Positions 1 through 7,372 of a stretch of DNA of 64,000 nucleotides are shown here, piece by piece. Under the pieces are notes generated by a model. The model ran no database searches. It was not told the origin of the DNA and saw only the letters and a program-made list of their open reading frames with translations. Both the position numbers and the translations under genes were made by a program. The stretch is from the sequence record MW812342.1; one strand, 5' to 3'. The first letter of the stretch is position 1. Each line of letters opens with the position of its first letter.

Positions 1-192
1 CCGGTCTGTGTGAACACGCCGTACTCCCACGCAGAGATTGCGGTCATCGGCGAACTGATTCGTACCGAGGCTCGGATTCGCAATCCTAACTTCGGGAAGT
101 ATTACACCGTGCCCGAATCAAAAAAATAATATTTTTTACAAACCGGGGTGTTCCTGTGTTCAAACCCAATCACCAGCACTAGGGAAATCATC

Positions 193-375
193 ATGACACC
201 AGAACAACGTCGCCGCCGCGACGAGGAAGAACGCCGTCGTCGCCAGTCCTCACAACGCGGTTACACGCCGGGTTATACCCCGGTCGATGATTCGCCGTAC
301 TACGGCGGAGATGATTCGTCACCTTCGGGTTGCGATTCCGGTTCTGACAGCGGCGGTTCTTGCGGCTGCGACTAA
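193..375 (+). CDS. small hypothetical protein, Arg-rich N-terminus and Ser/Gly/Asp-rich C-terminus
   Basis: ATG at 193 after AGGGAAA (track start 148 probably too long); MTPEQRRRRDEEERRRR...SGCDSGSDSGGSCGCD. Confidence 0.6.
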   Translation: MTPEQRRRRDEEERRRRQSSQRGYTPGYTPVDDSPYYGGDDSSPSGCDSGSDSGGSCGCD

Positions 376-387
376 GCGAGATAAACC

Positions 388-876
388 ATGACCACGATTG
401 CGTACGACGGAAAAACACTGGCGTCCGATAGCCAGTCGACTCAGGGTAACATCCGCGTGTCGAACTCTGCCATGAAAATCTTCGCCCGTGGTGAAGGTGA
501 CGATTGGTCTATCGAGGGAAAACGTATCGCGGCTTTCGGTGTGGCGGGTAATCTCCACGATGCCAAAGACCTGCGCCAGCGAATGTCATCGTTTGTCGGA
601 CACCATTCCGGTGACCACTTCGAGAACGGCTCCACGTTCGCGTTCATTGCAATCGCTGAAGACCACACCGTGTTCGTTGGCGGGAAGTATTCCGACGAAC
701 CACGTTCGTGGGTCATGGAAGCCGAAGCGCCGGTAGCGGTCGGTAGCGGTGGTGACTTCGCCCTCGGGGCCATGGCTGCCGGGGCAAAAGCCGAGGATGC
801 CGTTCGCATCGCTTCGAAGTTTGACGTGAACACCAATGACAGTGTCTCGTCCATCGATTGCTGGGGTAACACATGA
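388..876 (+). CDS. HslV/proteasome-beta-like Ntn-hydrolase
   Basis: N-terminal M-T-T-I (Thr nucleophile after Met removal), ASDSQST, MKIF (Lys) and AVGSGG motifs of the proteasome-beta/HslV fold. Confidence 0.75.
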   Translation: MTTIAYDGKTLASDSQSTQGNIRVSNSAMKIFARGEGDDWSIEGKRIAAFGVAGNLHDAKDLRQRMSSFVGHHSGDHFENGSTFAFIAIAEDHTVFVGGKYSDEPRSWVMEAEAPVAVGSGGDFALGAMAAGAKAEDAVRIASKFDVNTNDSVSSIDCWGNT

Positions 877-1208
877 GCAAAGAAAAAGTTCAACCGGAAC
901 TGGTGTTTGATTTTGCGTATCCGCTCGATGAGGCATGCGCGATTCTGGGGAATACCCGCGTACCAAAAATCGCGGCGCTGACGGATGTCGTTTCCACCGT
1001 CCAGTTTCACATGTGGGCTGCAACCGATTTGGTAACTGTGATGGTTCTGTCGAAAGACGGCGATGCCACGACGGTAAATACTTACCAAGGCTATAGTCCT
1101 GTAACCAAAATCGAATCCATCAACAACGCCATGGAGCAAGCACTCAAGACTGCATTGAAGTCTTGGGCCTATCTTCAGACGCGCAATTTGAGCGACGCGG
1201 TAGTCTAA
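873..1208 (+). CDS. hypothetical protein
   Basis: 111-aa ORF coupled by ATGA overlap to the upstream gene. Confidence 0.65.
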   Translation: MSKEKVQPELVFDFAYPLDEACAILGNTRVPKIAALTDVVSTVQFHMWAATDLVTVMVLSKDGDATTVNTYQGYSPVTKIESINNAMEQALKTALKSWAYLQTRNLSDAVV

Positions 1209-1231
1209 TTACAAGACTACCCTGTTGTATG
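1202..1231 (+). promoter_or_regulatory. putative phage promoter for tRNA transcript (AGTCTAATTACAAGA-N11-TATG)
   Basis: 15-bp exact repeat of 4376-4390 with TATG at the same offset; lies just before tRNA-Trp. Confidence 0.5.
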
Positions 1232-1255
1232 CTGAGAAGCACGTAATTGAATTCT

Positions 1256-1331
1256 AGGGGAGTAGCTCAGCTGGCAGAGCACCGGTCTCCAAAACCGGGT
1301 GTCCAGAGTTCGAATCTCTGTTCCCCTGCCA
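1256..1331 (+). tRNA. tRNA-Trp (CCA)
   Basis: AGGGGAG/TTCCCCT acceptor, CCGGT-CTCCAAA-ACCGG anticodon arm, TTCGAAT T-loop, encoded CCA; 76 nt. Confidence 0.95.
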
Positions 1332-1395
1332 AATTTAGCCAGCAAGAATGTGAGAAACCGCGGAAGACCAAATAGTCAATCGCTGGAGAATTCTC

Positions 1396-1617
1396 ATGAA
1401 CTTGTATTTGCTTGAACGTCAAGACGATGTCGGTTACGACGAGTTTGATTCCATAGTCGTTGCAGCTCCCTCGGAAGCTGTGGCGCGCGCAATTCGTCCA
1501 AGGGGTGGTTGGGTGTACGGTGAGGCATGGGATGAGGCGGAAACGCTGACCTGCACAAACATCGGAACCACACACCTCCCAATCGGTATTGTTCATGAAT
1601 CGTTTAATGCAGGCTGA
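1396..1617 (+). CDS. small hypothetical protein between tRNAs
   Basis: 73-aa ORF with GGAG Shine-Dalgarno. Confidence 0.65.
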   Translation: MNLYLLERQDDVGYDEFDSIVVAAPSEAVARAIRPRGGWVYGEAWDEAETLTCTNIGTTHLPIGIVHESFNAG

Positions 1618-1645
1618 ATAGGTGGGCTTCGGCCCACCAAACTCT

Positions 1646-1720
1646 GGGGCGCTGGCCGAGTGGCTTAGGCGCAGGATTGCAAATCCTGTTACCGCGGTTC
1701 AATTCCGCGGCGTCCCTCCA
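1646..1720 (+). tRNA. tRNA-Cys (GCA)
   Basis: GGGGCGC/GCGTCCC acceptor, CAGGA-TTGCAAA-TCCTG anticodon arm, U discriminator plus CCA. Confidence 0.95.
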
Positions 1721-1858
1721 AATACCCTGTCTCGCCCGACAGGATTTCTTTACAAAAACCCGTAGAGCCTTTCGGGGGTGAAGCCAGTTGGAGTGTTGCT
1801 ACTCTACGGTCTTCTACTCCTGGGCGCTGGCTCACCCACCTAAAGGATAAAAAGAATT

Positions 1859-2284
1859 ATGTTCGGTCTTTTCAAAAAACGCGCTAACCGTGCTATGTCT
1901 GAAATCAAAAAATTCGACAAACGTGACCTGGCAGAAGCCGTGGTTAACGCCGCTTACCTGATTGCGTACGCAGACGGCGAGCTGGAATCTTCTGAGAAAG
2001 CGAAAATCGATCAGGTGCTGCGCGCCAACCCGGTACTGTCTAACTTCCAGTCCGAGCTGAACGCAATTGCTTCTACTATCATCGCTCAGCTGGAAGCGGA
2101 CATCGACATCGGCCGTCGTGCTGCCCTGCGCCAGATTGCTGATGTGAAAGGCGACCAGCGCGAGTGTGAAGACGTTCTGGATGTTGCTGTGGCTATTGCC
2201 CGTGCTGATGGCGAAATCGAACCGGCAGAAGTTGAAATGCTGAAACAGATCGCCGAAGCGCTGGGTCTGCGTTACGACGCGTAA
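1859..2284 (+). CDS. terB: TerB-family (tellurite resistance-like) protein
   Basis: Two A(D)G-x-x-x-x-E repeats (IAYADGELESSE, IARADGEIEPAE) and all-helical pattern typical of TerB; AAGGA SD. Confidence 0.8.
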   Translation: MFGLFKKRANRAMSEIKKFDKRDLAEAVVNAAYLIAYADGELESSEKAKIDQVLRANPVLSNFQSELNAIASTIIAQLEADIDIGRRAALRQIADVKGDQRECEDVLDVAVAIARADGEIEPAEVEMLKQIAEALGLRYDA

Positions 2285-2287
2285 GCC

Positions 2288-2470
2288 ATGAAGCTGAAAA
2301 CCAAGTTATACATCGTGGCCGCGTTGCTGCTGATGCTGCTTGGCAACTTCGTTGGGCGTGCCTTCACGTTAATCGCCTACGTAGCTGTAATCGGCGTAGT
2401 AGCCTATCTGGTCTGGCCTGTCATCAAGAGGTTTGCGGCGAAGTCGCAGGCGAAGGTGAAAGGCAAGTAG
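2288..2470 (+). CDS. small membrane protein
   Basis: 60 aa, two hydrophobic segments followed by a basic tail; starts 3 nt after terB stop. Confidence 0.65.
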   Translation: MKLKTKLYIVAALLLMLLGNFVGRAFTLIAYVAVIGVVAYLVWPVIKRFAAKSQAKVKGK

Positions 2471-2476
2471 TAATTC

Positions 2477-2514
2477 GGTGCGGGGGTCGTTCCCTCCGCA
2501 CCACCCTTTTCTTC
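2477..2514 (+). terminator. putative intrinsic terminator/attenuator
   Basis: GGTGCGGGGG...CCCTCCGCACC hairpin followed by CTTTTCTTCT. Confidence 0.5.
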
Positions 2515-2536
2515 TCATCTAAAAATAGGTATAACC

Positions 2537-3376
2537 ATGAGAAAGGTGCTTTTCGGAATACTTGCAGCGTTGACGTTTAGCATGTCCGCCGTCGCGGCAG
2601 ACGAAGTAGTCATTACCACAGGACAGCAGGGCCTGACCTATAACTCGGTCTATGGCGTTAATCTGGCCGGTGCTATCAGCGAGTTCGGTACTCGTGCACG
2701 GGTCATCCCGTCGAAGGGGTCATTAGATAACCTCGACAAAGTTGCCGCAGGTGAAGCCCAGATTGGTTTCACGCAGGCAGATGCTTTCCAGTTCTGGCGC
2801 GCTAAGCACCCGAACGAAGCGCAGAACGTTGACATCGTCGGTCAGCTGGCCCGCGAATGTGTGTGGGTCGCTGTCAAGAAAGACGGCAAGGTCAAAGATG
2901 CGAAAGATTTAACCGATGGCGCGAAAATCGCCGTGGGTGAACCGGACTCCGGCTCGTACGCCAGTTGGCAATACCTGCAACAGTTGGTGAAAGAGTATTC
3001 CAAAGCGGAAACTTACGCCAAGGGTGGCATCCGTTCGTTGTCCAAAGTGGCAACGGGTGAATACGATGCGTTCCTGTGGGTGTCTGCGCCGGATAAAGGC
3101 AACAAATTCCTCGAAGCGGTCAATCAAGACAGTTCTGGTTTAGAGCTGATTGACATGAGCACATGGAACGTCAACGACAAACTGCCTAACGGCCAGTCGG
3201 TCTACACGAAAGAAACGGCCAAGACAGACAAGACCGCGTTCTTCGGTAAGAAAGTTGACGTCCCGTGCACCACCACACTCGTCGTGGCCAACACTGACGC
3301 CGGTGATGATCTGCTCGAAACCGTTTCTACCATCCTCCTGAAAAACAATTCACGAGTGATGGGGGACAAAAAATAA
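2537..3376 (+). CDS. TAXI-family (TRAP-like) periplasmic solute-binding protein
   Basis: Signal peptide ending AVAA; ITTGQQGLTY, SKGSLDNL, IGFTQADA and IAVGEPDSGS match TAXI-type binding-protein motifs. Confidence 0.75.
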   Translation: MRKVLFGILAALTFSMSAVAADEVVITTGQQGLTYNSVYGVNLAGAISEFGTRARVIPSKGSLDNLDKVAAGEAQIGFTQADAFQFWRAKHPNEAQNVDIVGQLARECVWVAVKKDGKVKDAKDLTDGAKIAVGEPDSGSYASWQYLQQLVKEYSKAETYAKGGIRSLSKVATGEYDAFLWVSAPDKGNKFLEAVNQDSSGLELIDMSTWNVNDKLPNGQSVYTKETAKTDKTAFFGKKVDVPCTTTLVVANTDAGDDLLETVSTILLKNNSRVMGDKK

Positions 3377-3384
3377 AAATATGT

Positions 3385-3995
3385 ACTGACCCAGTGCATC
3401 TTTTCGGGCTGGGTAGGGTTGATGTCCCTACCTGCGCGGTGTTCGTTAAGGCTGGTAACGTTCGCTGAGACCTGTCGCATACCCGTAAGTCGGCAGTAGC
3501 CGGTTACACAAAAGACTATCGCGTAAGCTGTGAAGTTTCCCCGGTAGGTAACCGACCGTTCACGATTTCATTAGGTGAGCAAATAATCTATGCAAGGACT
3601 TCTAGGATTTGTGCTCGACATGATGGGTAGCTTACGCCGCCTCATCAAGCAGTTACGAATCTGGAAGCTTGCCCATTACTGGTTTACAGGCGAAAAGGCT
3701 TCTCGTGAGAGAGCCACATGCAAACTGCGTATTTACATTAGTATGTTCACGGCTGTGAGCATAGGTCAAGCACCGGAACGATAAGCCGGACAGCTACGCC
3801 TGTAAAATACAATCTGAAAATCATAATGGGATTAAGTTCCCAGATTTGAAAAGGCGACTGTGTGTCGTCGGCGATAACCCCCTGTCGTGGACCAGGTTAT
3901 CCCAAAGGTAATGTGAAAGGGGTTGGTGCTTGGAGGCGCTAAGACCGGCGGATACGCTGGCTCAGAAGAAGAAGTCCATCAACCCCATTCTCACC
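3385..3995 (+). ncRNA. candidate large (~600 nt) structured non-coding RNA
   Basis: No convincing ORF; long-range helices 3521-29/3629-37, 3683-92/3797-3806, 3873-79/3895-3901 and 3919-28/3977-86 plus several local hairpins. Confidence 0.5.
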
Positions 3996-4046
3996 TAAGT
4001 GACTCTTTTACAAGATGTTACTTATATATGCGAAAGCGAGGTGAAC

Positions 4047-4373
4047 ATGGGAACGTATCGTGAAGGCCCTGAAAGCACGGTGACTCACCGTAGTCATGAT
4101 TACTCTGTGGATGCATTGCTGGATATAGCGGAACGTCATAGCCTCGTTCAAATTCCAGTGTCTAGGATAGAATGGATTTTAAACGAGACTACGCTCGAAG
4201 ATGAGCGAGTTAAGAGTGCAGATACAGATTATCCCATTATTGTGCTGCACGAAGGAAGTTTGTATATTGTATTAGACGGTGCCCATCGCCTTGCGAAGGC
4301 GGTTGCCGAAGGCAAGGATACCATTGCAGCCAAGATACTTGTGCCTGCTAATCTACCGAAACCGGTACGATAA
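4047..4373 (+). CDS. ParB/sulfiredoxin-like domain protein
   Basis: PIIV...IVLDGAHRLAKA motif (DG-x-HR); ATG 4047 follows GAGGTG SD. Confidence 0.7.
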   Translation: MGTYREGPESTVTHRSHDYSVDALLDIAERHSLVQIPVSRIEWILNETTLEDERVKSADTDYPIIVLHEGSLYIVLDGAHRLAKAVAEGKDTIAAKILVPANLPKPVR

Positions 4374-4375
4374 AA

Positions 4376-4405
4376 AGTCTAATTACAAGAATACACTGTA
4401 TTATG
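4376..4405 (+). promoter_or_regulatory. putative phage promoter for main tRNA cluster
   Basis: AGTCTAATTACAAGA identical to 1202-1216, with TATG 26 nt from motif start in both copies. Confidence 0.5.
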
Positions 4406-4492
4406 TCGGAAACCCGATTTGATGTTGCACAGGGCGTTACGCTGCGGCGTTTGCCGGTGTGCAGGGTTAGGTCGGGATTCTGGCACCTATTC

Positions 4493-4577
4493 GGCGGGTT
4501 ACTCAAGCGGCAACGAGAGCAGACTGTAAATCTGTTGACTTCGGTCTTCGGTGGTTCGAGTCCACCACACGCCACCA
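4493..4577 (+). tRNA. tRNA-Tyr (GTA)
   Basis: GCAGA-CTGTAAA-TCTGT anticodon arm, long variable arm, TTCGAGT T-loop, ACCA end; one G.A mismatch in acceptor. Confidence 0.92.
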
Positions 4578-4583
4578 AACAGT

Positions 4584-4658
4584 TGGGGTATAGCCAAGCG
4601 GTAAGGCCCAGGGCTTTGATCCCTGTATGCCTAGGTTCGATTCCTAGTGCCCCTGCCA
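4584..4658 (+). tRNA. tRNA-Gln (TTG)
   Basis: CAGGG-CTTTGAT-CCCTG anticodon arm, TTCGATT T-loop, GCCA end. Confidence 0.92.
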
Positions 4659-4664
4659 AACAAC

Positions 4665-4747
4665 GGAAGTAAAGCTCGCTGCTTCGGAAACTCATGGTGA
4701 AAAACCCGTGACCTTCCAGGCCGGTGCTATACCGGATGCTTCCACCA
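4665..4747 (+). ncRNA. degenerate tRNA-like RNA (non-canonical D/T loops, 8-nt anticodon loop)
   Basis: 7-bp acceptor GGAAGTA/TGCTTCC plus ACCA; TCATGG/CCGTGA arm; CCGG/CCGG T-like arm with TGCTATA loop. Confidence 0.65.
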
Positions 4748-4753
4748 AACAAT

Positions 4754-4973
4754 GGTACCTGTCACAGCAGCCCTTGAGGCTTACGCGAAGATGACTGGCC
4801 GCCCATTTTTACCGGGTAACACATTCCTGCCTGCGTGCTATTGCCGCTAAGGTTTGTCCCTGGTGTCGTGCGTCATTCGGGTCTACCCATGCTCTGCGGA
4901 GTGTGCGCTGATGTCTCGATAAACGCCATAGGGCCGCCTTGAGAACTCCGTGGAATTCGGAGGGGTACCACCC
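4754..4973 (+). ncRNA. tmRNA-like cloverleaf RNA with ~125-nt insert in place of anticodon loop
   Basis: GGTACCT/GGGTACC 7-bp acceptor plus A-CC; CTCCG-TGGAATT-CGGAG T-arm directly 5' of the acceptor strand; helix 4797-4804/4931-4938. Confidence 0.6.
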
Positions 4974-5048
4974 ATTCTTGTGTTTCCTTATCCTGAAGAC
5001 ATTCGTAAGACAAATCTATTCATGGTCGAGGAAGCACAGAACCCATTT

Positions 5049-5123
5049 AGGACTGTAGTTCAGTGGGAGAACGCCGCCCTGTCACGGCGGAGGTCGCGGG
5101 TTCGAAACCCGTCAGTCCTGCCA
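5049..5123 (+). tRNA. tRNA-Asp (GTC)
   Basis: AGGACTG/CAGTCCT acceptor, CCGCC-CTGTCAC-GGCGG arm, GCCA end. Confidence 0.95.
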
Positions 5124-5131
5124 GTTTCAAA

Positions 5132-5207
5132 TGCGTCTTAGCTCAGTTGGTAGAGCGCACCCCTGATAAGGGTGAGGTCACTGGTTCAAGTCCAGTAGAT
5201 GCAACCA
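5132..5207 (+). tRNA. tRNA-Ile (GAT)
   Basis: CACCC-CTGATAA-GGGTG arm, canonical D/T loops, ACCA end; 76 nt. Confidence 0.95.
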
Positions 5208-5213
5208 AACAAC

Positions 5214-5291
5214 GGTGTATGTAGTTCAGTTGGTTAGAATTCCGGCTTGTGACGTCGGAGGTCGAGAGTTCAAGTCTCTCCATACACCCCA
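5214..5291 (+). tRNA. tRNA-His (GTG)
   Basis: TTGTGAC anticodon loop, G-1:C73 His identity pair, CCA end. Confidence 0.95.
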
Positions 5292-5296
5292 TTTGC

Positions 5297-5372
5297 ATTC
5301 CCGTCATCTAGTTGGTTAGGATACGACACTTTCACTGTCGGTACACGAGTTCGAGTCTCGTCGGGAATACCA
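5297..5372 (+). tRNA. tRNA-Glu (TTC)
   Basis: ATTCCCG/CGGGAAT acceptor, CGACA-CTTTCAC-TGTCG arm, ACCA end. Confidence 0.95.
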
Positions 5373-5503
5373 TGTTATCCTCACGTAAATCATCGCCGGT
5401 GAGGGGTAAGGCAAGCTCCTGCCCCAATCCCATAATTACATCTCGGCTAAACACCGGGCGCTGTTGGTGTAGATGATACCCACTGGGTGTGAGGGGCCTA
5501 AAC

Positions 5504-5593
5504 GGAGAATTGACTGAGCGGCTAAAGGTGCTCCCCTGCTAAGGGAGTGTATGCGCAAGTGTACCATTGGTTCGAATCCAATATTCTCCGCCA
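5504..5593 (+). tRNA. tRNA-Ser (GCT)
   Basis: CTCCC-CTGCTAA-GGGAG arm, long variable arm, G discriminator plus CCA; 90 nt. Confidence 0.95.
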
Positions 5594-5769
5594 TGTTCTC
5601 TTGCTGTGGGAAATAGAAGCGAACGTAGAAACGCCGGTTAGCTCAAAGCTTAGAGCGTCTCATCTTCGGATGAGAAGGTTGGGGGTGCAACCCGAATTCC
5701 CTATCGGCAACGGCCTGCTTGTCAGGATTAGAAACATCTACGTGGATGGGAACTTCTACAGCAAGAACA
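5594..5769 (+). ncRNA. anticodon-less tRNA-like domain capping a long stem
   Basis: Cloverleaf 5633-5708 (GCTC/GAGC D-arm, TCTCATC-TTCG-GATGAGA arm) enclosed by helices 5623-29/5737-43 and 5600-11/5754-65. Confidence 0.6.
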
Positions 5770-5771
5770 AA

Positions 5772-5970
5772 ACAGTGGGAGCATTGTCCACTGTGACACC
5801 GGCAAAGGTTTCGTACCTTGCAGGTTGGGCGGAAGCCCGATGTTCCCCCGAACGCTGGCCTTCTGGCCGATACAGTGAAAGCTTACCCATGCCGTTGATC
5901 ACCTCTTCTGCTGCTGCCAACACACTGTATCACCGGAATCAGTCCTGCCTTAAATGGCAAGCGTTCACCC
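5772..5970 (+). ncRNA. candidate multi-helix structured RNA domain
   Basis: ACAGTGG/CCACTGT, GGGC-GGAA-GCCC, GAACGCT/AGCGTTC (5850/5960) and GATACAGTG/CACTGTATC (5869/5923). Confidence 0.45.
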
Positions 5971-5974
5971 ATTC

Positions 5975-6052
5975 GGTTCCCCAAGGCGGCTTGGGACATT
6001 ATCTCTCGGCTCTGTTGGGTAATGTCGTGGTTCAACTCCACAGGAATCACCA
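5975..6052 (+). ncRNA. degenerate tRNA-like RNA
   Basis: GGTTCC/GGAATC acceptor plus ACCA, GTGG-TTCAACT-CCAC T-arm, ACATTA/TAATGT arm with 18-nt loop. Confidence 0.5.
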
Positions 6053-6058
6053 AACAAT

Positions 6059-6127
6059 GGCCTCTCGCGATGGTGTGCTAAAAGCGCTTTATTGTGCTGC
6101 TAGGATGGTTCGAATCCGTCAGAGGCA
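6059..6127 (+). pseudogene. pseudo-tRNA (canonical T-arm, 6-nt anticodon loop, no CCA)
   Basis: GCCTCT/AGAGGC acceptor, GATGG-TTCGAAT-CCGTC T-arm, AGCGC-TTTATT-GTGCT arm. Confidence 0.5.
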
Positions 6128-6128
6128 A

Positions 6129-6204
6129 GAGCACCGCTGTTAAGCTGGTTAACACCCGACTCATAATCGGATATTCGCACGTTCGATTCGTGTCGGTGCT
6201 CGCC
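6129..6204 (+). tRNA. tRNA with CAT anticodon (Met or Ile2), atypical
   Basis: CCGA-CTCATAA-TCGG arm, GCACG-TTCGATT-CGTGT T-arm, 8-bp GAGCACCG/CGGTGCTC acceptor, ends GCCC. Confidence 0.8.
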
Positions 6205-6212
6205 CTTTTTTA

Positions 6213-6288
6213 GACTCTGTAGCTCAGTTGGTAGAGCGGATGACTGTTAATCATCAGGTCACAGGTTCAAGCCCTGTCAGAGTCGCCA
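6213..6288 (+). tRNA. tRNA-Asn (GTT)
   Basis: GACTCTG/CAGAGTC acceptor, GATGA-CTGTTAA-TCATC arm, GCCA end; 76 nt. Confidence 0.95.
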
Positions 6289-6559
6289 CATTTTGCATTG
6301 CCCGAGTCCCGAATGACATTCCGGAAAAATATCATCCATGGTCAAGGGCAGTGCAGAACCAAATTCCCGGCCCTTGCAGATAAAGCTTACCTGCATTAGC
6401 TGTCCCCTGCGGGGGTCGGGTACCACCTTTGTTCGTTTTGTTTTTTTCTTTCAATTGCCTGGCGGTATTGGTGGGAACAAAACGAATGAAGCCCTAGCGG
6501 GGGAAAAGCCGCTAACAACAACAGAAGCAGTAAAAACAGAAGTAAAAGCAGGAGTAGTT

Positions 6560-7372
6560 ATGTTTACTATCTTACGTAAAATCAATGGTAACCGCACACC
6601 AACCGAACACGAATCCCCAACGCTGGGTGATACGAAGTCACAAGTGTTCAAAGATGCGATGTCGCTTCTTACCGAATCCAACAACGTGCATAATTGCATG
6701 GATTCTGGAATGGATGCGAAGCCGTGGATTAACGGCAAATCTAAGCCTGTTGAAGAATGGGTAGAGCGCTTTAAGAAAGCGTTTGAGGTGGTCGACCCTG
6801 ACCCACAAGAGCTTATCGATCTGGTAAGTGAACTTTCTCCAGGAATGTTTGACAAAGCAAATGCGCGTTTTGCATCTCACTTTGGTCAGGTAGAAGATGC
6901 CTTCCTGAGAGACACCGGGCAAACCATCATCTGGTTAATACCTAAAGGTACCCCGATCGATAGCCAGTTCAAAGACATTCCACGCCAGTCTGTTGAAACC
7001 CTCCACACTACACTCGATTTCATCGAAGCTGATGAGATGAAGTTTGCTGTGTTCAATAGCAAGGCATTGTGGGATGGGTATAACTCCGCTGAACTGTTTG
7101 GCGGTGTAGCCACCGAGATTTCCTCGGTAGAACTCCAGCACATCTATCACGACGATATGGCGATGCCGCAAGAAGCGGTACTCAAAGCCAGCCGTCGGGG
7201 TGACCGTACGATGGAGCAGGTCATCGGGGTCCTTGCTTATGGCAACTCCGAAGAACCCGACCCTACCACGGGCAATGTGCCGGTCACAGTGATGACCTAC
7301 GAGTTTATCTACCAAGGCGATGAAGTCTACGTTACGAACCGTCACGGTAAGACAGTGGACTCCATCCGTTAA
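6560..7372 (+). CDS. hypothetical protein
   Basis: ATG 6560 after AGGAG SD (track start 6338 runs through structured non-coding sequence); 270 aa. Confidence 0.75.
   Translation: MFTILRKINGNRTPTEHESPTLGDTKSQVFKDAMSLLTESNNVHNCMDSGMDAKPWINGKSKPVEEWVERFKKAFEVVDPDPQELIDLVSELSPGMFDKANARFASHFGQVEDAFLRDTGQTIIWLIPKGTPIDSQFKDIPRQSVETLHTTLDFIEADEMKFAVFNSKALWDGYNSAELFGGVATEISSVELQHIYHDDMAMPQEAVLKASRRGDRTMEQVIGVLAYGNSEEPDPTTGNVPVTVMTYEFIYQGDEVYVTNRHGKTVDSIR

What the first reader, a model, noticed from the sequence alone, without database searches (positions are those of the whole stretch)
4754..4973. ~220-nt tmRNA-like cloverleaf with non-Ala identity
Seen: 5' GGTACCT pairs with GGGTACC (4963-69), followed by A-C-C. 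A 5-bp/7-nt T-arm (CTCCG-TGGAATT-CGGAG) sits directly before it. There is a D-like stem GTCA/TGAC (4761/4792), and an anticodon-position helix (4797-4804/4931-38) encloses about 125 nt. An ATG-initiated 19-codon ORF lies at 4791-4850 (MTGRPFLPGNTFLPACYCR). Known: tmRNA has this tRNA-domain-plus-insert topology but is ~360 nt with a G3.U70 alanine determinant. Here pair 3-70 is U-A, and the insert is too short for a typical group I intron. Inference: a miniature or alternative tmRNA, a tRNA-scaffolded small RNA, or an intron-split tRNA of unknown type.
Basis: partly seen in the sequence, partly recalled or inferred. Interest (0 to 1): 0.82.

Follow-up and report, generated by a model that had tools for sequence, protein, structure and literature searches.

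The report
tRNA-shaped non-coding RNA in jumbo phages
The 220-nt stretch is a real, conserved, unannotated RNA gene in the tRNA cluster of an Erwinia jumbo phage: it has a tRNA's outline, but a long structured arm replaces the anticodon, so it is a tRNA mimic of unknown job rather than a tmRNA or a split tRNA.

Summary
The window is Erwinia phage pEa_SNUABM_10 (Machinavirus, a phiKZ/SPN3US-like jumbo phage). The stems are real. I found 15 distinct homologues (118-220 nt) in four jumbo-phage genera, always inside tRNA clusters. They keep the acceptor stem, a 4-bp D-like stem in seven different complementary versions, an "anticodon-position" helix with a conserved mismatch, an inner RGC/GCY helix and an invariant T arm. 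Over the 21 frame pairs, 95% of cells are paired, against 37-52% when partners are slid by 1-3 columns.

It is not a tmRNA:
- ARAGORN and Rfam give no hit.
- Pair 3-70 is U-A or C-G.
- The T loop is UGNNAUU.
- The 19-codon ORF is confined to this phage and its near-identical relatives: frameshifted or extended in other Machinaviruses, ATG absent elsewhere.

It is not an intron-bearing tRNA: there is no anticodon loop, no canonical D or T invariants and no group I match.

Best reading: a non-decoding, tRNA-scaffolded stable RNA released by the tRNA-processing pathway. The closest analogue is T4 species 1 RNA (rnaC). Its function is unknown; a tRNA-mimic binding platform or decoy is the leading guess. 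The same cluster holds at least five more unannotated tRNA-shaped RNAs, at least four of which lack an anticodon loop. The family is absent from Rfam 15 and from the GenBank annotation.

The parts
4748..4753 (+). Spacer AACAAU between the CCA of the preceding tRNA-like gene and G1 of the element; the same AACA(A/G)(U/C) spacer follows tRNA-Tyr, tRNA-Gln, tRNA-Ile and another tRNA-like gene
   Evidence: homologues in other genera are also preceded by CAA(U/C)
4754..4760 (+). Acceptor stem, 5' strand GGUACCU
   Evidence: Pairs with 4963-4969. Covaries to GACACUG/CGGUGUC, GACACCC/GGGUGUC and others; pairs 2-71, 3-70, 6-67 and 7-66 change on both sides
4761..4764 (+). D-like stem, 5' strand GUCA (no linker after the acceptor stem)
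   Evidence: Seven complementary versions across the family: GUCA/UGAC, GACU/AGUC, GACC/GGUC, UCCC/GGGA, GCAC/GUGC, GUUA/UAAC, GUCU/AGAC
4765..4791 (+). 27-nt D-loop region: invariant C, an internal hairpin (GC-AGCC-CUUGA-GGCU-UAC-GC, 4767-4786), then GAAGA with an invariant GA
   Evidence: the hairpin is present in every member, but its sequence and length vary (24-33 nt)
4792..4795 (+). D-like stem, 3' strand UGAC
4797..4804 (+). Anticodon-position helix P-a, 5' strand GGC-C-GCCC
   Evidence: Pairs with 4931-4938. The mismatch position is never a Watson-Crick pair: A.A in 11 members, C.C in 3, C.A in 1
4811..4864 (+). Hairpin domain H1 (ACCGGG...CCUGGU), a Machinavirus-specific insertion in the 5' side of the internal loop
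   Evidence: RNAalifold on 5 Machinavirus sequences; absent from the 118-156-nt members
4868..4927 (+). Helix P-b (G-UGCGU/ACGCC) closing the tip domain H2, including the hairpin CAUGCUC-UGCG-GAGUGUG
   Evidence: tip hairpin pairs at A4 columns 138-149 and 139-148 change on both sides. In the other genera P-b is RGC/GCY and switches G-C<->A-U within each of three genera
4931..4938 (+). P-a, 3' strand GGGC-C-GCC
4939..4945 (+). Variable-loop equivalent UUGAGAA (6-7 nt across the family)
4946..4962 (+). T arm CUCCG-UGGAAUU-CGGAG. The stem is invariant in all 15 members; the loop is U-G-N-N-A-U-U (G53-C61, U54 and A58 kept; Psi55-C56 not)
4963..4969 (+). Acceptor stem, 3' strand GGGUACC
4970..4973 (+). 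Discriminator A (G in one member), invariant CC, then C (C or U in the family, never A)
   Evidence: the phage's own tRNA-Met (6129-6204) also lacks an encoded A76
4974..5048 (+). Conserved ~70-nt trailing hairpin; a second copy follows tRNA-Asn at 6289-6365. Possibly the 3' boundary or terminator of a transcription unit
   Evidence: z = -3.5 and -2.3, and the two copies differ by compensatory changes in the stem

Best explanation
The element is a gene for a stable, non-decoding, tRNA-shaped RNA. It belongs to a previously undescribed family found in SPN3US/phiKZ-like jumbo phages of Enterobacterales.

Proposed pathway:
1. It is transcribed on the + strand together with the neighbouring tRNAs (inferred).
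2. The 7-bp acceptor stem, stacked on the invariant 5-bp T stem and followed by the invariant A-C-C tail, makes it a substrate for host RNase P, which cuts before G4754 (inferred).
3. The 3' end is set by cleavage of the next tRNA (4-5 nt downstream in three genera) or, in Machinavirus, by the trailing hairpin. Exonuclease trimming follows, and probably addition of A76 by the CCA-adding enzyme (inferred).
4. The product is a cloverleaf. Its anticodon arm is replaced by a long, interrupted helix (P-a with a conserved non-Watson-Crick mismatch, an internal loop, P-b, and a lineage-specific tip). It has no anticodon loop and no conserved ORF, so it cannot decode or tag (shown by comparison).
5. 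The tRNA half supplies processing, stability and tRNA mimicry. The conserved irregular arm is the specific functional surface, most likely a binding site for a protein that recognises tRNA-like RNA. On this view the RNA acts as a mimic, sponge or scaffold rather than in translation (speculative).
For: - Identity and context: the window is MW812342.1, the element is unannotated, and it lies between tRNA-Gln and tRNA-Asp.
- Family: 15 distinct homologues of 118-220 nt in Machinavirus, Erskinevirus, Wellingtonvirus and Seoulvirus genomes and in metagenomic jumbo-phage contigs. There is one copy per genome, always in the tRNA cluster.
- Structure: 95% of 315 cells are paired against 37-52% for slid partners; 8 pairs change on both sides; the covariation score is reached by 0 of 500 shuffles.
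- The D-like stem occurs in seven complementary versions.
- P-b RGC/GCY switches G-C<->A-U within each of three genera.
- The Machinavirus tip hairpin shows compensatory changes.
- The T-arm stem is identical in all members.
- The spacer is the same as for real tRNAs, and the next tRNA lies 4-5 nt downstream in other genera.
- ACC is conserved while position 76 varies between C and U, and the phage tRNA-Met also lacks an encoded A76.
- The ORF is not conserved.
- T4 rnaC, a 139-nt stable RNA in the T4 tRNA cluster, likewise has a T arm and an acceptor-like stem around a long insert.
- At least five further cloverleaf-like RNAs sit in the same cluster, at least four of them with non-decoding arms, so tRNA mimicry without decoding is a recurring theme here.
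Against: - There is no expression, end-mapping or processing data.
- The MFE z-score of the single sequence is unremarkable (-1.28).
- The T loop lacks Psi55-C56 and the D region lacks G18G19, so a tRNA-like elbow, which helps RNase P and the CCA-adding enzyme, is not assured.
- Two Machinaviruses (ChrisDB, Caitlin) lack the element in the fetched regions, so it is dispensable in some relatives.
- No partner protein was identified. The neighbouring ORFs have no RNA-related Pfam domains.
- The decoy or scaffold function is inference only, and I found no published precedent for a phage tRNA-like decoy.
Confidence: 0.6

Rival explanations
1. A miniature or alternative tmRNA: the tRNA-like domain is charged, enters stalled ribosomes with SmpB, and an internal frame such as 4791-4850 is translated as a tag.
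For: The topology is an acceptor stem plus T arm around a large insert. An ATG ORF of 19 codons exists in this phage. The ACC tail could be completed to CCA.
Against: - ARAGORN finds no tmRNA, and no tmRNA family in Rfam 15 matches even at E<=10.
- Pair 3-70 is U-A or C-G in all 15 members, never G.U.
- Pairs 2-71 and 3-70 differ between genera, so no acceptor-stem identity is conserved.
- The T loop is UGNNAUU rather than a canonical T loop, and a 4-bp D stem is present.
- The ORF's stop is specific to this phage; the frame is shifted in Parshik, Huxley and Machina; the ATG is absent in three genera.
- The 118-120-nt members have a fully paired 43-nt arm with no room for a tag frame.
Confidence: 0.03
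2. A tRNA gene interrupted by an intron or insertion, or a decaying tRNA pseudogene.
For: It lies in a tRNA cluster and has a cloverleaf outline. GenBank records of related phages (Parshik, Huxley, Machina, Stratton, Asesino) annotate over-long 'tRNA-Ile(aat)' genes of 97-121 nt in the same clusters, and ARAGORN as run here calls a 94-nt one in Parshik.
Against: - No member has a 7-nt anticodon loop or a 5-bp anticodon stem flanking the insert.
- U8, A14, G18G19 and T54-Psi55-C56 are missing.
- No group I intron or tRNA model matches at E<=10.
- The insert itself is under structural selection: P-b covariation in three genera, a conserved mismatch, tip-hairpin compensation.
- A 29-nt stretch spanning the T arm and acceptor 3' strand matched the exact search pattern in 14 of the 15 members, from all four genera, and the T-arm stem is identical in all 15. 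That argues against neutral decay.
Confidence: 0.06
3. A purely cis-acting processing or punctuation element: the tRNA-like fold exists only to direct RNase P and 3' processing, or to terminate the tRNA transcript. The released RNA has no function of its own.
For: In Machinavirus it is the last gene before a conserved hairpin that elsewhere marks the end of the cluster. tRNA-like punctuation is an established mechanism (mitochondrial transcripts; MALAT1 mascRNA).
Against: - Punctuation needs only an acceptor/T minihelix. Here the D-like arm, P-a with its conserved mismatch, P-b and the tip are also maintained by compensatory change across four genera.
- In three genera the element sits between ordinary tRNAs that already provide RNase P sites.
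Confidence: 0.15
4. A chance arrangement of complementary segments (GGTACC is a palindrome, so two copies always pair).
For: The single-sequence z-score is -1.28. The acceptor + T-arm + NCC pattern gives four isolated chance hits and one alternative 5' pairing onto tRNA-Asn's 3' end over both strands of the 64 kb window.
Against: Homologues with a non-palindromic acceptor (GACACUG/CGGUGUC) keep the pairing, and every helix shows covariation.
Confidence: 0.01

Closest known systems
Bacteriophage T4 species 1 RNA (rnaC; also species 2, rnaD)
   Same: A stable RNA of about 120-140 nt encoded inside a phage tRNA cluster. It has a T arm and an acceptor-like stem formed by its two ends around a long structured insert, is non-decoding, and does not end in an encoded CCA (sequence and fold). 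From my own knowledge of the T4 literature, it is released from the tRNA precursor by the tRNA-processing enzymes and its function is still unknown.
   Different: There is no sequence or covariance-model similarity: model R1 finds nothing in the T4 tRNA region. T4 rnaC has a canonical UUCGAAU T loop and a mismatched acceptor stem. It lacks the 4-bp D-like stem and the GGC-N-GC helix.
tmRNA (SsrA), tRNA-like domain
   Same: An acceptor stem plus T arm, with a long helix in place of the anticodon arm. Both are RNase P substrates.
   Different: tmRNA has G3.U70, a canonical T loop, no D stem, pseudoknots and a conserved tag frame. None of these is present here.
YrlA / bacterial Y RNA-like tRNA mimics (Rfam RF02553)
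   Same: A non-coding RNA that mimics tRNA (T arm, D arm, acceptor-like stem) and serves as a protein-binding module. Versions occur in phages, and some jumbo phages carry Ro/TROVE with a tRNA-like partner (PMC7824862).
   Different: The topology is reversed. In YrlA the RNA ends lie in the Ro-binding stem at the anticodon side and the acceptor is closed. Here the ends form the acceptor stem. No RF02553 match covers the element. No Ro gene was looked for outside the window.
tRNA-like processing modules (MALAT1 mascRNA; gammaherpesvirus tRNA-miRNA units)
   Same: A tRNA-like fold is used so that the host tRNA-processing enzymes release a non-coding RNA.
   Different: Those are eukaryotic systems. 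Here the tRNA-like frame and the functional arm are one molecule.
GOLLD and ROOL large ncRNAs
   Same: Structured non-coding RNAs of unknown function that are frequently encoded next to tRNA genes in phage genomes (own knowledge).
   Different: They are much larger (about 600-800 nt), are not tRNA-shaped, and give no Rfam match here.

Membership tests
tmRNA | Recognised by tmRNA detectors or covariance models | tested here: not met
   ARAGORN reports no tmRNA. Rfam 15 gives no hit at gathering thresholds or at E<=10 over 4400-5300, nor at E<=5 over 1-7000. Homologues in other genera give none at E<=1.
tmRNA | G3.U70 alanine identity pair | tested here: not met
   Pair 3-70 is U-A in 5 members and C-G in 10.
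tmRNA | Conserved tag reading frame with a resume codon and an in-frame stop | tested here: not met
   The ORF 4791-4850 has a phage-specific stop, is frameshifted in Parshik, Huxley and Machina, and its ATG is absent in the other three genera.
tmRNA | Pseudoknots flanking the tag frame | tested here: inconclusive
   Nested folds account for the whole insert, and the 118-nt members have no room for pseudoknots. Pseudoknots were not searched for explicitly.
tmRNA | tRNA-like domain with a canonical T loop and no D stem | tested here: not met
   The T loop is UGNNAUU, and a 4-bp covarying D-like stem is present.
tmRNA | Aminoacylation, SmpB binding, trans-translation | not testable with these tools
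   This needs biochemistry.
Canonical tRNA (optionally with a group I intron) | Matches the tRNA model; has a 7-nt anticodon loop on a 5-bp stem | tested here: not met
   No RF00005 hit at E<=10, while all 11 neighbouring tRNAs score 41-74 bits. The arm is a long interrupted helix with a pentaloop or multi-hairpin tip.
Canonical tRNA (optionally with a group I intron) | Invariant core: U8, A14, G18G19, T54-Psi55-C56 | tested here: not met
   There is no 8-9 linker. The D loop is 24-33 nt with its own hairpin. T-loop positions 55-56 are G and N.
Canonical tRNA (optionally with a group I intron) | Insert is a group I intron | tested here: not met
   No intron family matches at E<=10. The insert is 43-134 nt.
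tRNA-like fold (cloverleaf four-way junction) | 7-bp acceptor stacked on a 5-bp T stem, D-position and anticodon-position helices, NCC tail | tested here: met
   All four helices are supported by conservation or covariation in 15 sequences. Junction lengths are 0/1/6-7/0 nt against 2/1/4-5/0 in tRNA.
T4 species 1 RNA (rnaC) family | Sequence or structure homology to T4 rnaC | tested here: not met
   Model R1 finds nothing in T4 69000-75000. The resemblance is in architecture only.
YrlA / Y RNA-like | Match to RF02553; Ro-binding stem formed by the RNA ends | tested here: not met
   Only weak RF02553 hits, and they lie on neighbouring true tRNAs, not on the element. The ends form an acceptor stem.

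The most novel reading that the evidence does not exclude
Nucleus-forming jumbo phages of Enterobacterales carry a battery of tRNA mimics inside their tRNA clusters; this family and at least four of five neighbours lack an anticodon loop. These RNAs are matured like tRNAs. They act as sponges or decoys for proteins that recognise the acceptor/T-arm half of tRNA, for example tRNA-directed host defence enzymes or regulators that sense uncharged tRNA. That would make them an RNA-based counter-defence or host-takeover class. An even more radical reading, a non-alanine trans-translation RNA, is not strictly excluded, but I put it at about 3%.
Probability: 0.2. Interest if true: 0.8.

Novelty: new variant of a known kind. 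Interest (0 to 1): 0.55.

Why it matters
Phage tRNA clusters are usually read as codon-usage or anti-defence tRNA supplies, and the gaps between tRNAs are ignored. This gap holds a covariation-supported RNA family of 118-220 nt that keeps tRNA's processing half and replaces the decoding half. It is conserved across four genera of jumbo phages, yet it is absent from Rfam 15 and from every GenBank record examined. It is a modern, comparatively tractable counterpart of T4 species 1 RNA, whose function has been unknown for about 50 years. It comes with natural length variants and with relatives that lack it. If these RNAs prove to be tRNA-mimic decoys or scaffolds, they would add an RNA class to phage-host conflict. 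If not, they still correct the annotation of these genomes, where spurious ORFs such as Huxley gp17 and odd 'tRNA-Ile(aat)' calls overlap such regions.

Tried and rejected
- tmRNA or tRNA detection: ARAGORN and Rfam, at gathering and at permissive E-values, on the window and on four related loci. Nothing was found over the element or its homologues.
- Coding reading: the ORF is not conserved.
- Single-sequence thermodynamics: uninformative, z = -1.28.
- Search for cellular homologues: the exact family pattern is absent from 185,579 bacterial and archaeal genomes.
- More distant members: I fetched 69 loci through the neighbouring TAXI-like gene. Most were unrelated 35-60-kb viral contigs carrying a host-like copy of that gene. 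Only one new divergent member turned up, L034.
- Partner protein among neighbours: Pfam found only TerB and a TAXI/NMT1-like solute-binding protein. Annotation of 50 kb of pSal-SNUABM-04 showed split RNA polymerase subunits, DNA polymerase and structural genes, with no RNA-binding candidate.
- Homology to T4 rnaC or rnaD: none at covariance-model level.
- Idea that the element pairs with a downstream tRNA-like 3' end as a two-piece tmRNA: complementarity to UCCGUGA was seen in SNUABM_29 only, so I dropped it as coincidence.
- Literature: six full-text searches found no description of this RNA or of phage tRNA-like decoys.
- MAFFT columns for the D-like stem and P-b were out of register for some genera. 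Those helices were therefore counted from explicit segmentation in scripts rather than with the pair-counting tool.

Full report
**Where the window comes from.** A BLAST of 4660-5048 against GenBank phages gives a 100% match to Erwinia phage pEa_SNUABM_10 (MW812342.1, 238.9 kb, genus Machinavirus), with window coordinates equal to record coordinates. The close relative pSal-SNUABM-04 encodes split multisubunit RNA polymerase genes of the phiKZ/SPN3US type. The finding lies in a tRNA cluster on the + strand, between tRNA-Gln (4584-4658) and tRNA-Asp (5049-5123). It carries no annotation in any of the records examined.

**The observation.**
- acceptor stem 4754-4760 with 4963-4969 (7 bp);
- A-C-C-C at 4970-4973;
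- T arm 4946-4962 (5 bp, 7-nt loop);
- D-like stem 4761-4764 with 4792-4795;
- helix 4797-4804 with 4931-4938, enclosing 126 nt;
- the ORF 4791-4850.

On its own this is not compelling. The MFE z-score is -1.28. A simple scan for acceptor + T arm + NCC over both strands of the window gives 15 hits: nine tRNAs, this element, one alternative 5' pairing onto tRNA-Asn's 3' end, and four isolated chance hits. GGTACC is also a palindrome, so two copies always pair.

**Comparative evidence.**
- Near-identical to 92%-identical copies occur in Machinaviruses (SNUABM_6, _42, _43, Parshik, Huxley, Machina, pSal-SNUABM-04).
- The 3' third also matched other genera. Following those hits, together with one exact-pattern scan each of IMG/VR and the JGI metagenomes, gave 14 distinct sequences. 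A covariance model (R1) found a 15th, more divergent one.
- Lengths are 216-220 nt (Machinavirus), 143-145 nt (Erskinevirus: Asesino, EaH2, Stratton), 151-156 nt (Wellingtonvirus: Kwan, Wellington, SNUABM_11), 118-120 nt (Seoulvirus: SPAsTU, SNUABM_29) and 149 nt (the divergent metagenomic contig L034).
- There is one copy per genome, always in the tRNA cluster and always preceded by the CAA(U/C) spacer that also separates genuine tRNAs. In three genera the next tRNA follows 4-5 nt downstream.
- None was found in ChrisDB, Caitlin or T4, nor in 185,579 bacterial and archaeal genomes by exact pattern.

**Structure.** On the model-based alignment of 15 sequences, the 21 frame pairs are 94.9% paired, against 37-52% when the 3' partners are slid by 1-3 columns. 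Eight pairs change on both sides, and no shuffle of 500 reaches the covariation score (similar on the MAFFT alignment).
- The acceptor stem changes from GGUACCU/GGGUACC to GACACUG/CGGUGUC, GACACCC/GGGUGUC and others.
- The 4-bp D-like stem exists in seven complementary versions.
- The anticodon-position helix is GGC-N-GC / GC-N-GCC. Its N.N position is never Watson-Crick: A.A in 11 members, C.C in 3, C.A in 1.
- An internal loop follows, then a second helix RGC/GCY. This helix switches between G-C and A-U independently within Erskinevirus, Wellingtonvirus and Seoulvirus.
- The tip is lineage-specific: a 17-nt hairpin in Seoulvirus, about 43 nt with a GNRR hairpin in Erskine/Wellingtonvirus, and two hairpin domains in Machinavirus (H1 4811-4864, H2 4868-4927). 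The UGCG-capped hairpin in H2 shows compensatory changes.
- The T-arm stem is identical in all members. The loop is U-G-N-N-A-U-U, which keeps G53-C61, U54 and A58 but not Psi55-C56.
- G.U pairs in the acceptor stem fit only the + strand.
- Junction lengths are 0, 1, 6-7 and 0 nt. This is close to tRNA's 2, 1, 4-5 and 0, so 'cloverleaf' is a fair description.

**What it is not.** It is not a tmRNA:
- No detector or Rfam model matches at any threshold tried.
- Pair 3-70 is U-A or C-G. Pairs 2-71 and 3-70 differ between genera, so no acceptor identity is conserved.
- A D stem is present and the T loop is non-canonical.
- The 19-codon ORF ends at a stop that only this phage has. It is frameshifted in Parshik, Huxley and Machina, and its ATG is missing in the other genera.
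- The 118-nt members have no space for a tag frame.

It is not an intron-bearing tRNA. No member has an anticodon loop, the tRNA core invariants are absent, nothing matches tRNA or group I models, and the inserted arm is itself under structural selection. It is not coding, and it is not a chance fold.

**What it most likely is.** I read it as a non-decoding, tRNA-scaffolded stable RNA that is released from the tRNA precursor by the host tRNA-processing enzymes.
- RNase P is known to accept an acceptor/T-stem minihelix and, in bacteria, to pair with the C74-C75 of the substrate. That explains the invariant 12-bp stack and the invariant A-C-C.
- The position after CC varies between C and U and is never A. 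The phage's own tRNA-Met also lacks an encoded A76. The mature end is therefore probably ACC plus an added A.
- These processing steps are inferred, not shown.
- The conserved irregular arm looks like a specific binding surface. My leading functional guess is a tRNA mimic that binds a tRNA-recognising protein, acting as a sponge, decoy or scaffold. I hold this at roughly 30% within the overall model.
- A purely cis-acting punctuation role is the main ordinary rival (about 15%). It does not explain selection on the D-like arm and the long arm.

**Closest known.** T4 species 1 RNA (rnaC, 139 nt) is the nearest analogue. It sits in the T4 tRNA cluster, has a T arm and an acceptor-like stem around a long insert, and has no assigned function. 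It is an analogue rather than a homologue. The tmRNA tRNA-like domain, YrlA-type Y RNAs and mascRNA-like processing modules share parts of the logic but fail the membership tests listed.

**Context noticed.** The same cluster contains at least five other unannotated cloverleaf-like RNAs; at least four have non-decoding arms, and the fifth (6059-6127) was folded but its arm was not examined: 4665-4747, 5633-5710, 5850-5971 (which also ends ACCC), 5975-6049 and 6059-6127. Several have strongly negative folding z-scores. A conserved ~70-nt hairpin occurs twice, directly after the element and after the last tRNA. This element is therefore the largest member of a wider set of tRNA-shaped, mostly anticodon-less RNAs in these phages. 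That set is the more interesting lead.

**Verdict.** It is a new family, in neither Rfam 15 nor the GenBank annotation, and no description turned up in six full-text searches. It belongs to a known kind, the tRNA-like stable RNAs of phage tRNA clusters. Interest is moderate to good (0.55), limited by the lack of any expression or functional data.

Noticed in passing
window 4665-4747: An unannotated 83-nt cloverleaf-like RNA directly upstream of the element. It has a 7-bp acceptor stem, an extended anticodon arm with an 8-nt loop, a T loop UGCUAUA, and ends ACCA. Folding z = -3.4. It is also present (96% identical) in ChrisDB and SNUABM_9, which lack the main element. ARAGORN and Rfam tRNA do not call it.
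   Followed up: partly
window 5633-5710: A tRNA-like fold whose anticodon arm is a closed CUCAUC-UUCG-GAUGAG tetraloop hairpin, so it has no anticodon. Unannotated.
   Followed up: partly
window 5850-5971: A second tRNA-shaped RNA family, 122 nt. It has a 7-bp acceptor stem, no linker to a GGCC-UUCU-GGCC hairpin, a 9-bp long arm, a T arm UGCC-UUAAAU-GGCA, and ends ACCC like the main element. Folding z = -4.6. Apparent relatives occur in SNUABM_11 (L015:1549-1650), L020 and Caitlin, where it ends ACCA.
   Followed up: partly
window 5975-6049 and 6059-6127: Two more cloverleaf-like RNAs. The first has a 10-bp 'anticodon' arm, a canonical UUCAACU T loop and ACCA (z = -3.4). The second lies just before tRNA-Met (z = -2.1). 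The whole 5594-6129 gap is 92-95% conserved in Machinaviruses. In Huxley, Machina and Parshik a 98-aa 'hypothetical protein' is annotated across it, which looks spurious.
   Followed up: partly
window 4974-5048 and 6289-6365: A conserved ~70-nt hairpin occurs twice: right after the element and after tRNA-Asn at the end of the cluster. The two stems differ by compensatory changes (GUGUUUCCUU/GAGGAAGCAC against GCAUUGCCC/GGGCAGUGC). The same motif follows tRNA-Asn in Asesino and Caitlin. It may be a terminator for the phage RNA polymerase, a 3' stabiliser or another small RNA.
   Followed up: partly
window 6129-6204: The phage tRNA-Met(CAT) does not encode A76 (it reads ...CUCG-CC-C UUUUUU). The other ten tRNAs all encode CCA.
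   Followed up: no
L010:1384-1920 (Erwinia phage pEa_SNUABM_29): An HNH endonuclease ORF (Pfam HNH_3, E = 4e-7) is inserted in the tRNA cluster immediately upstream of that phage's copy of the element. This recalls segB in the T4 tRNA cluster.
   Followed up: partly
L002:2780-2873, L005:2612-2708, L008:2217-2337, L014:1979-2098: GenBank and ARAGORN give 94-121-nt 'tRNA-Ile(aat)' calls in related phages. These are over-long and are probably further non-canonical tRNA-like RNAs rather than real tRNAs.
   Followed up: no
window 2537-3376: A phage gene for a TAXI/NMT1-like periplasmic solute-binding protein. It has ~70% identical homologues on many 35-60-kb viral contigs, which suggests recent exchange with host or prophage genes. 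A TerB-domain protein lies at 1859-2284.
   Followed up: partly
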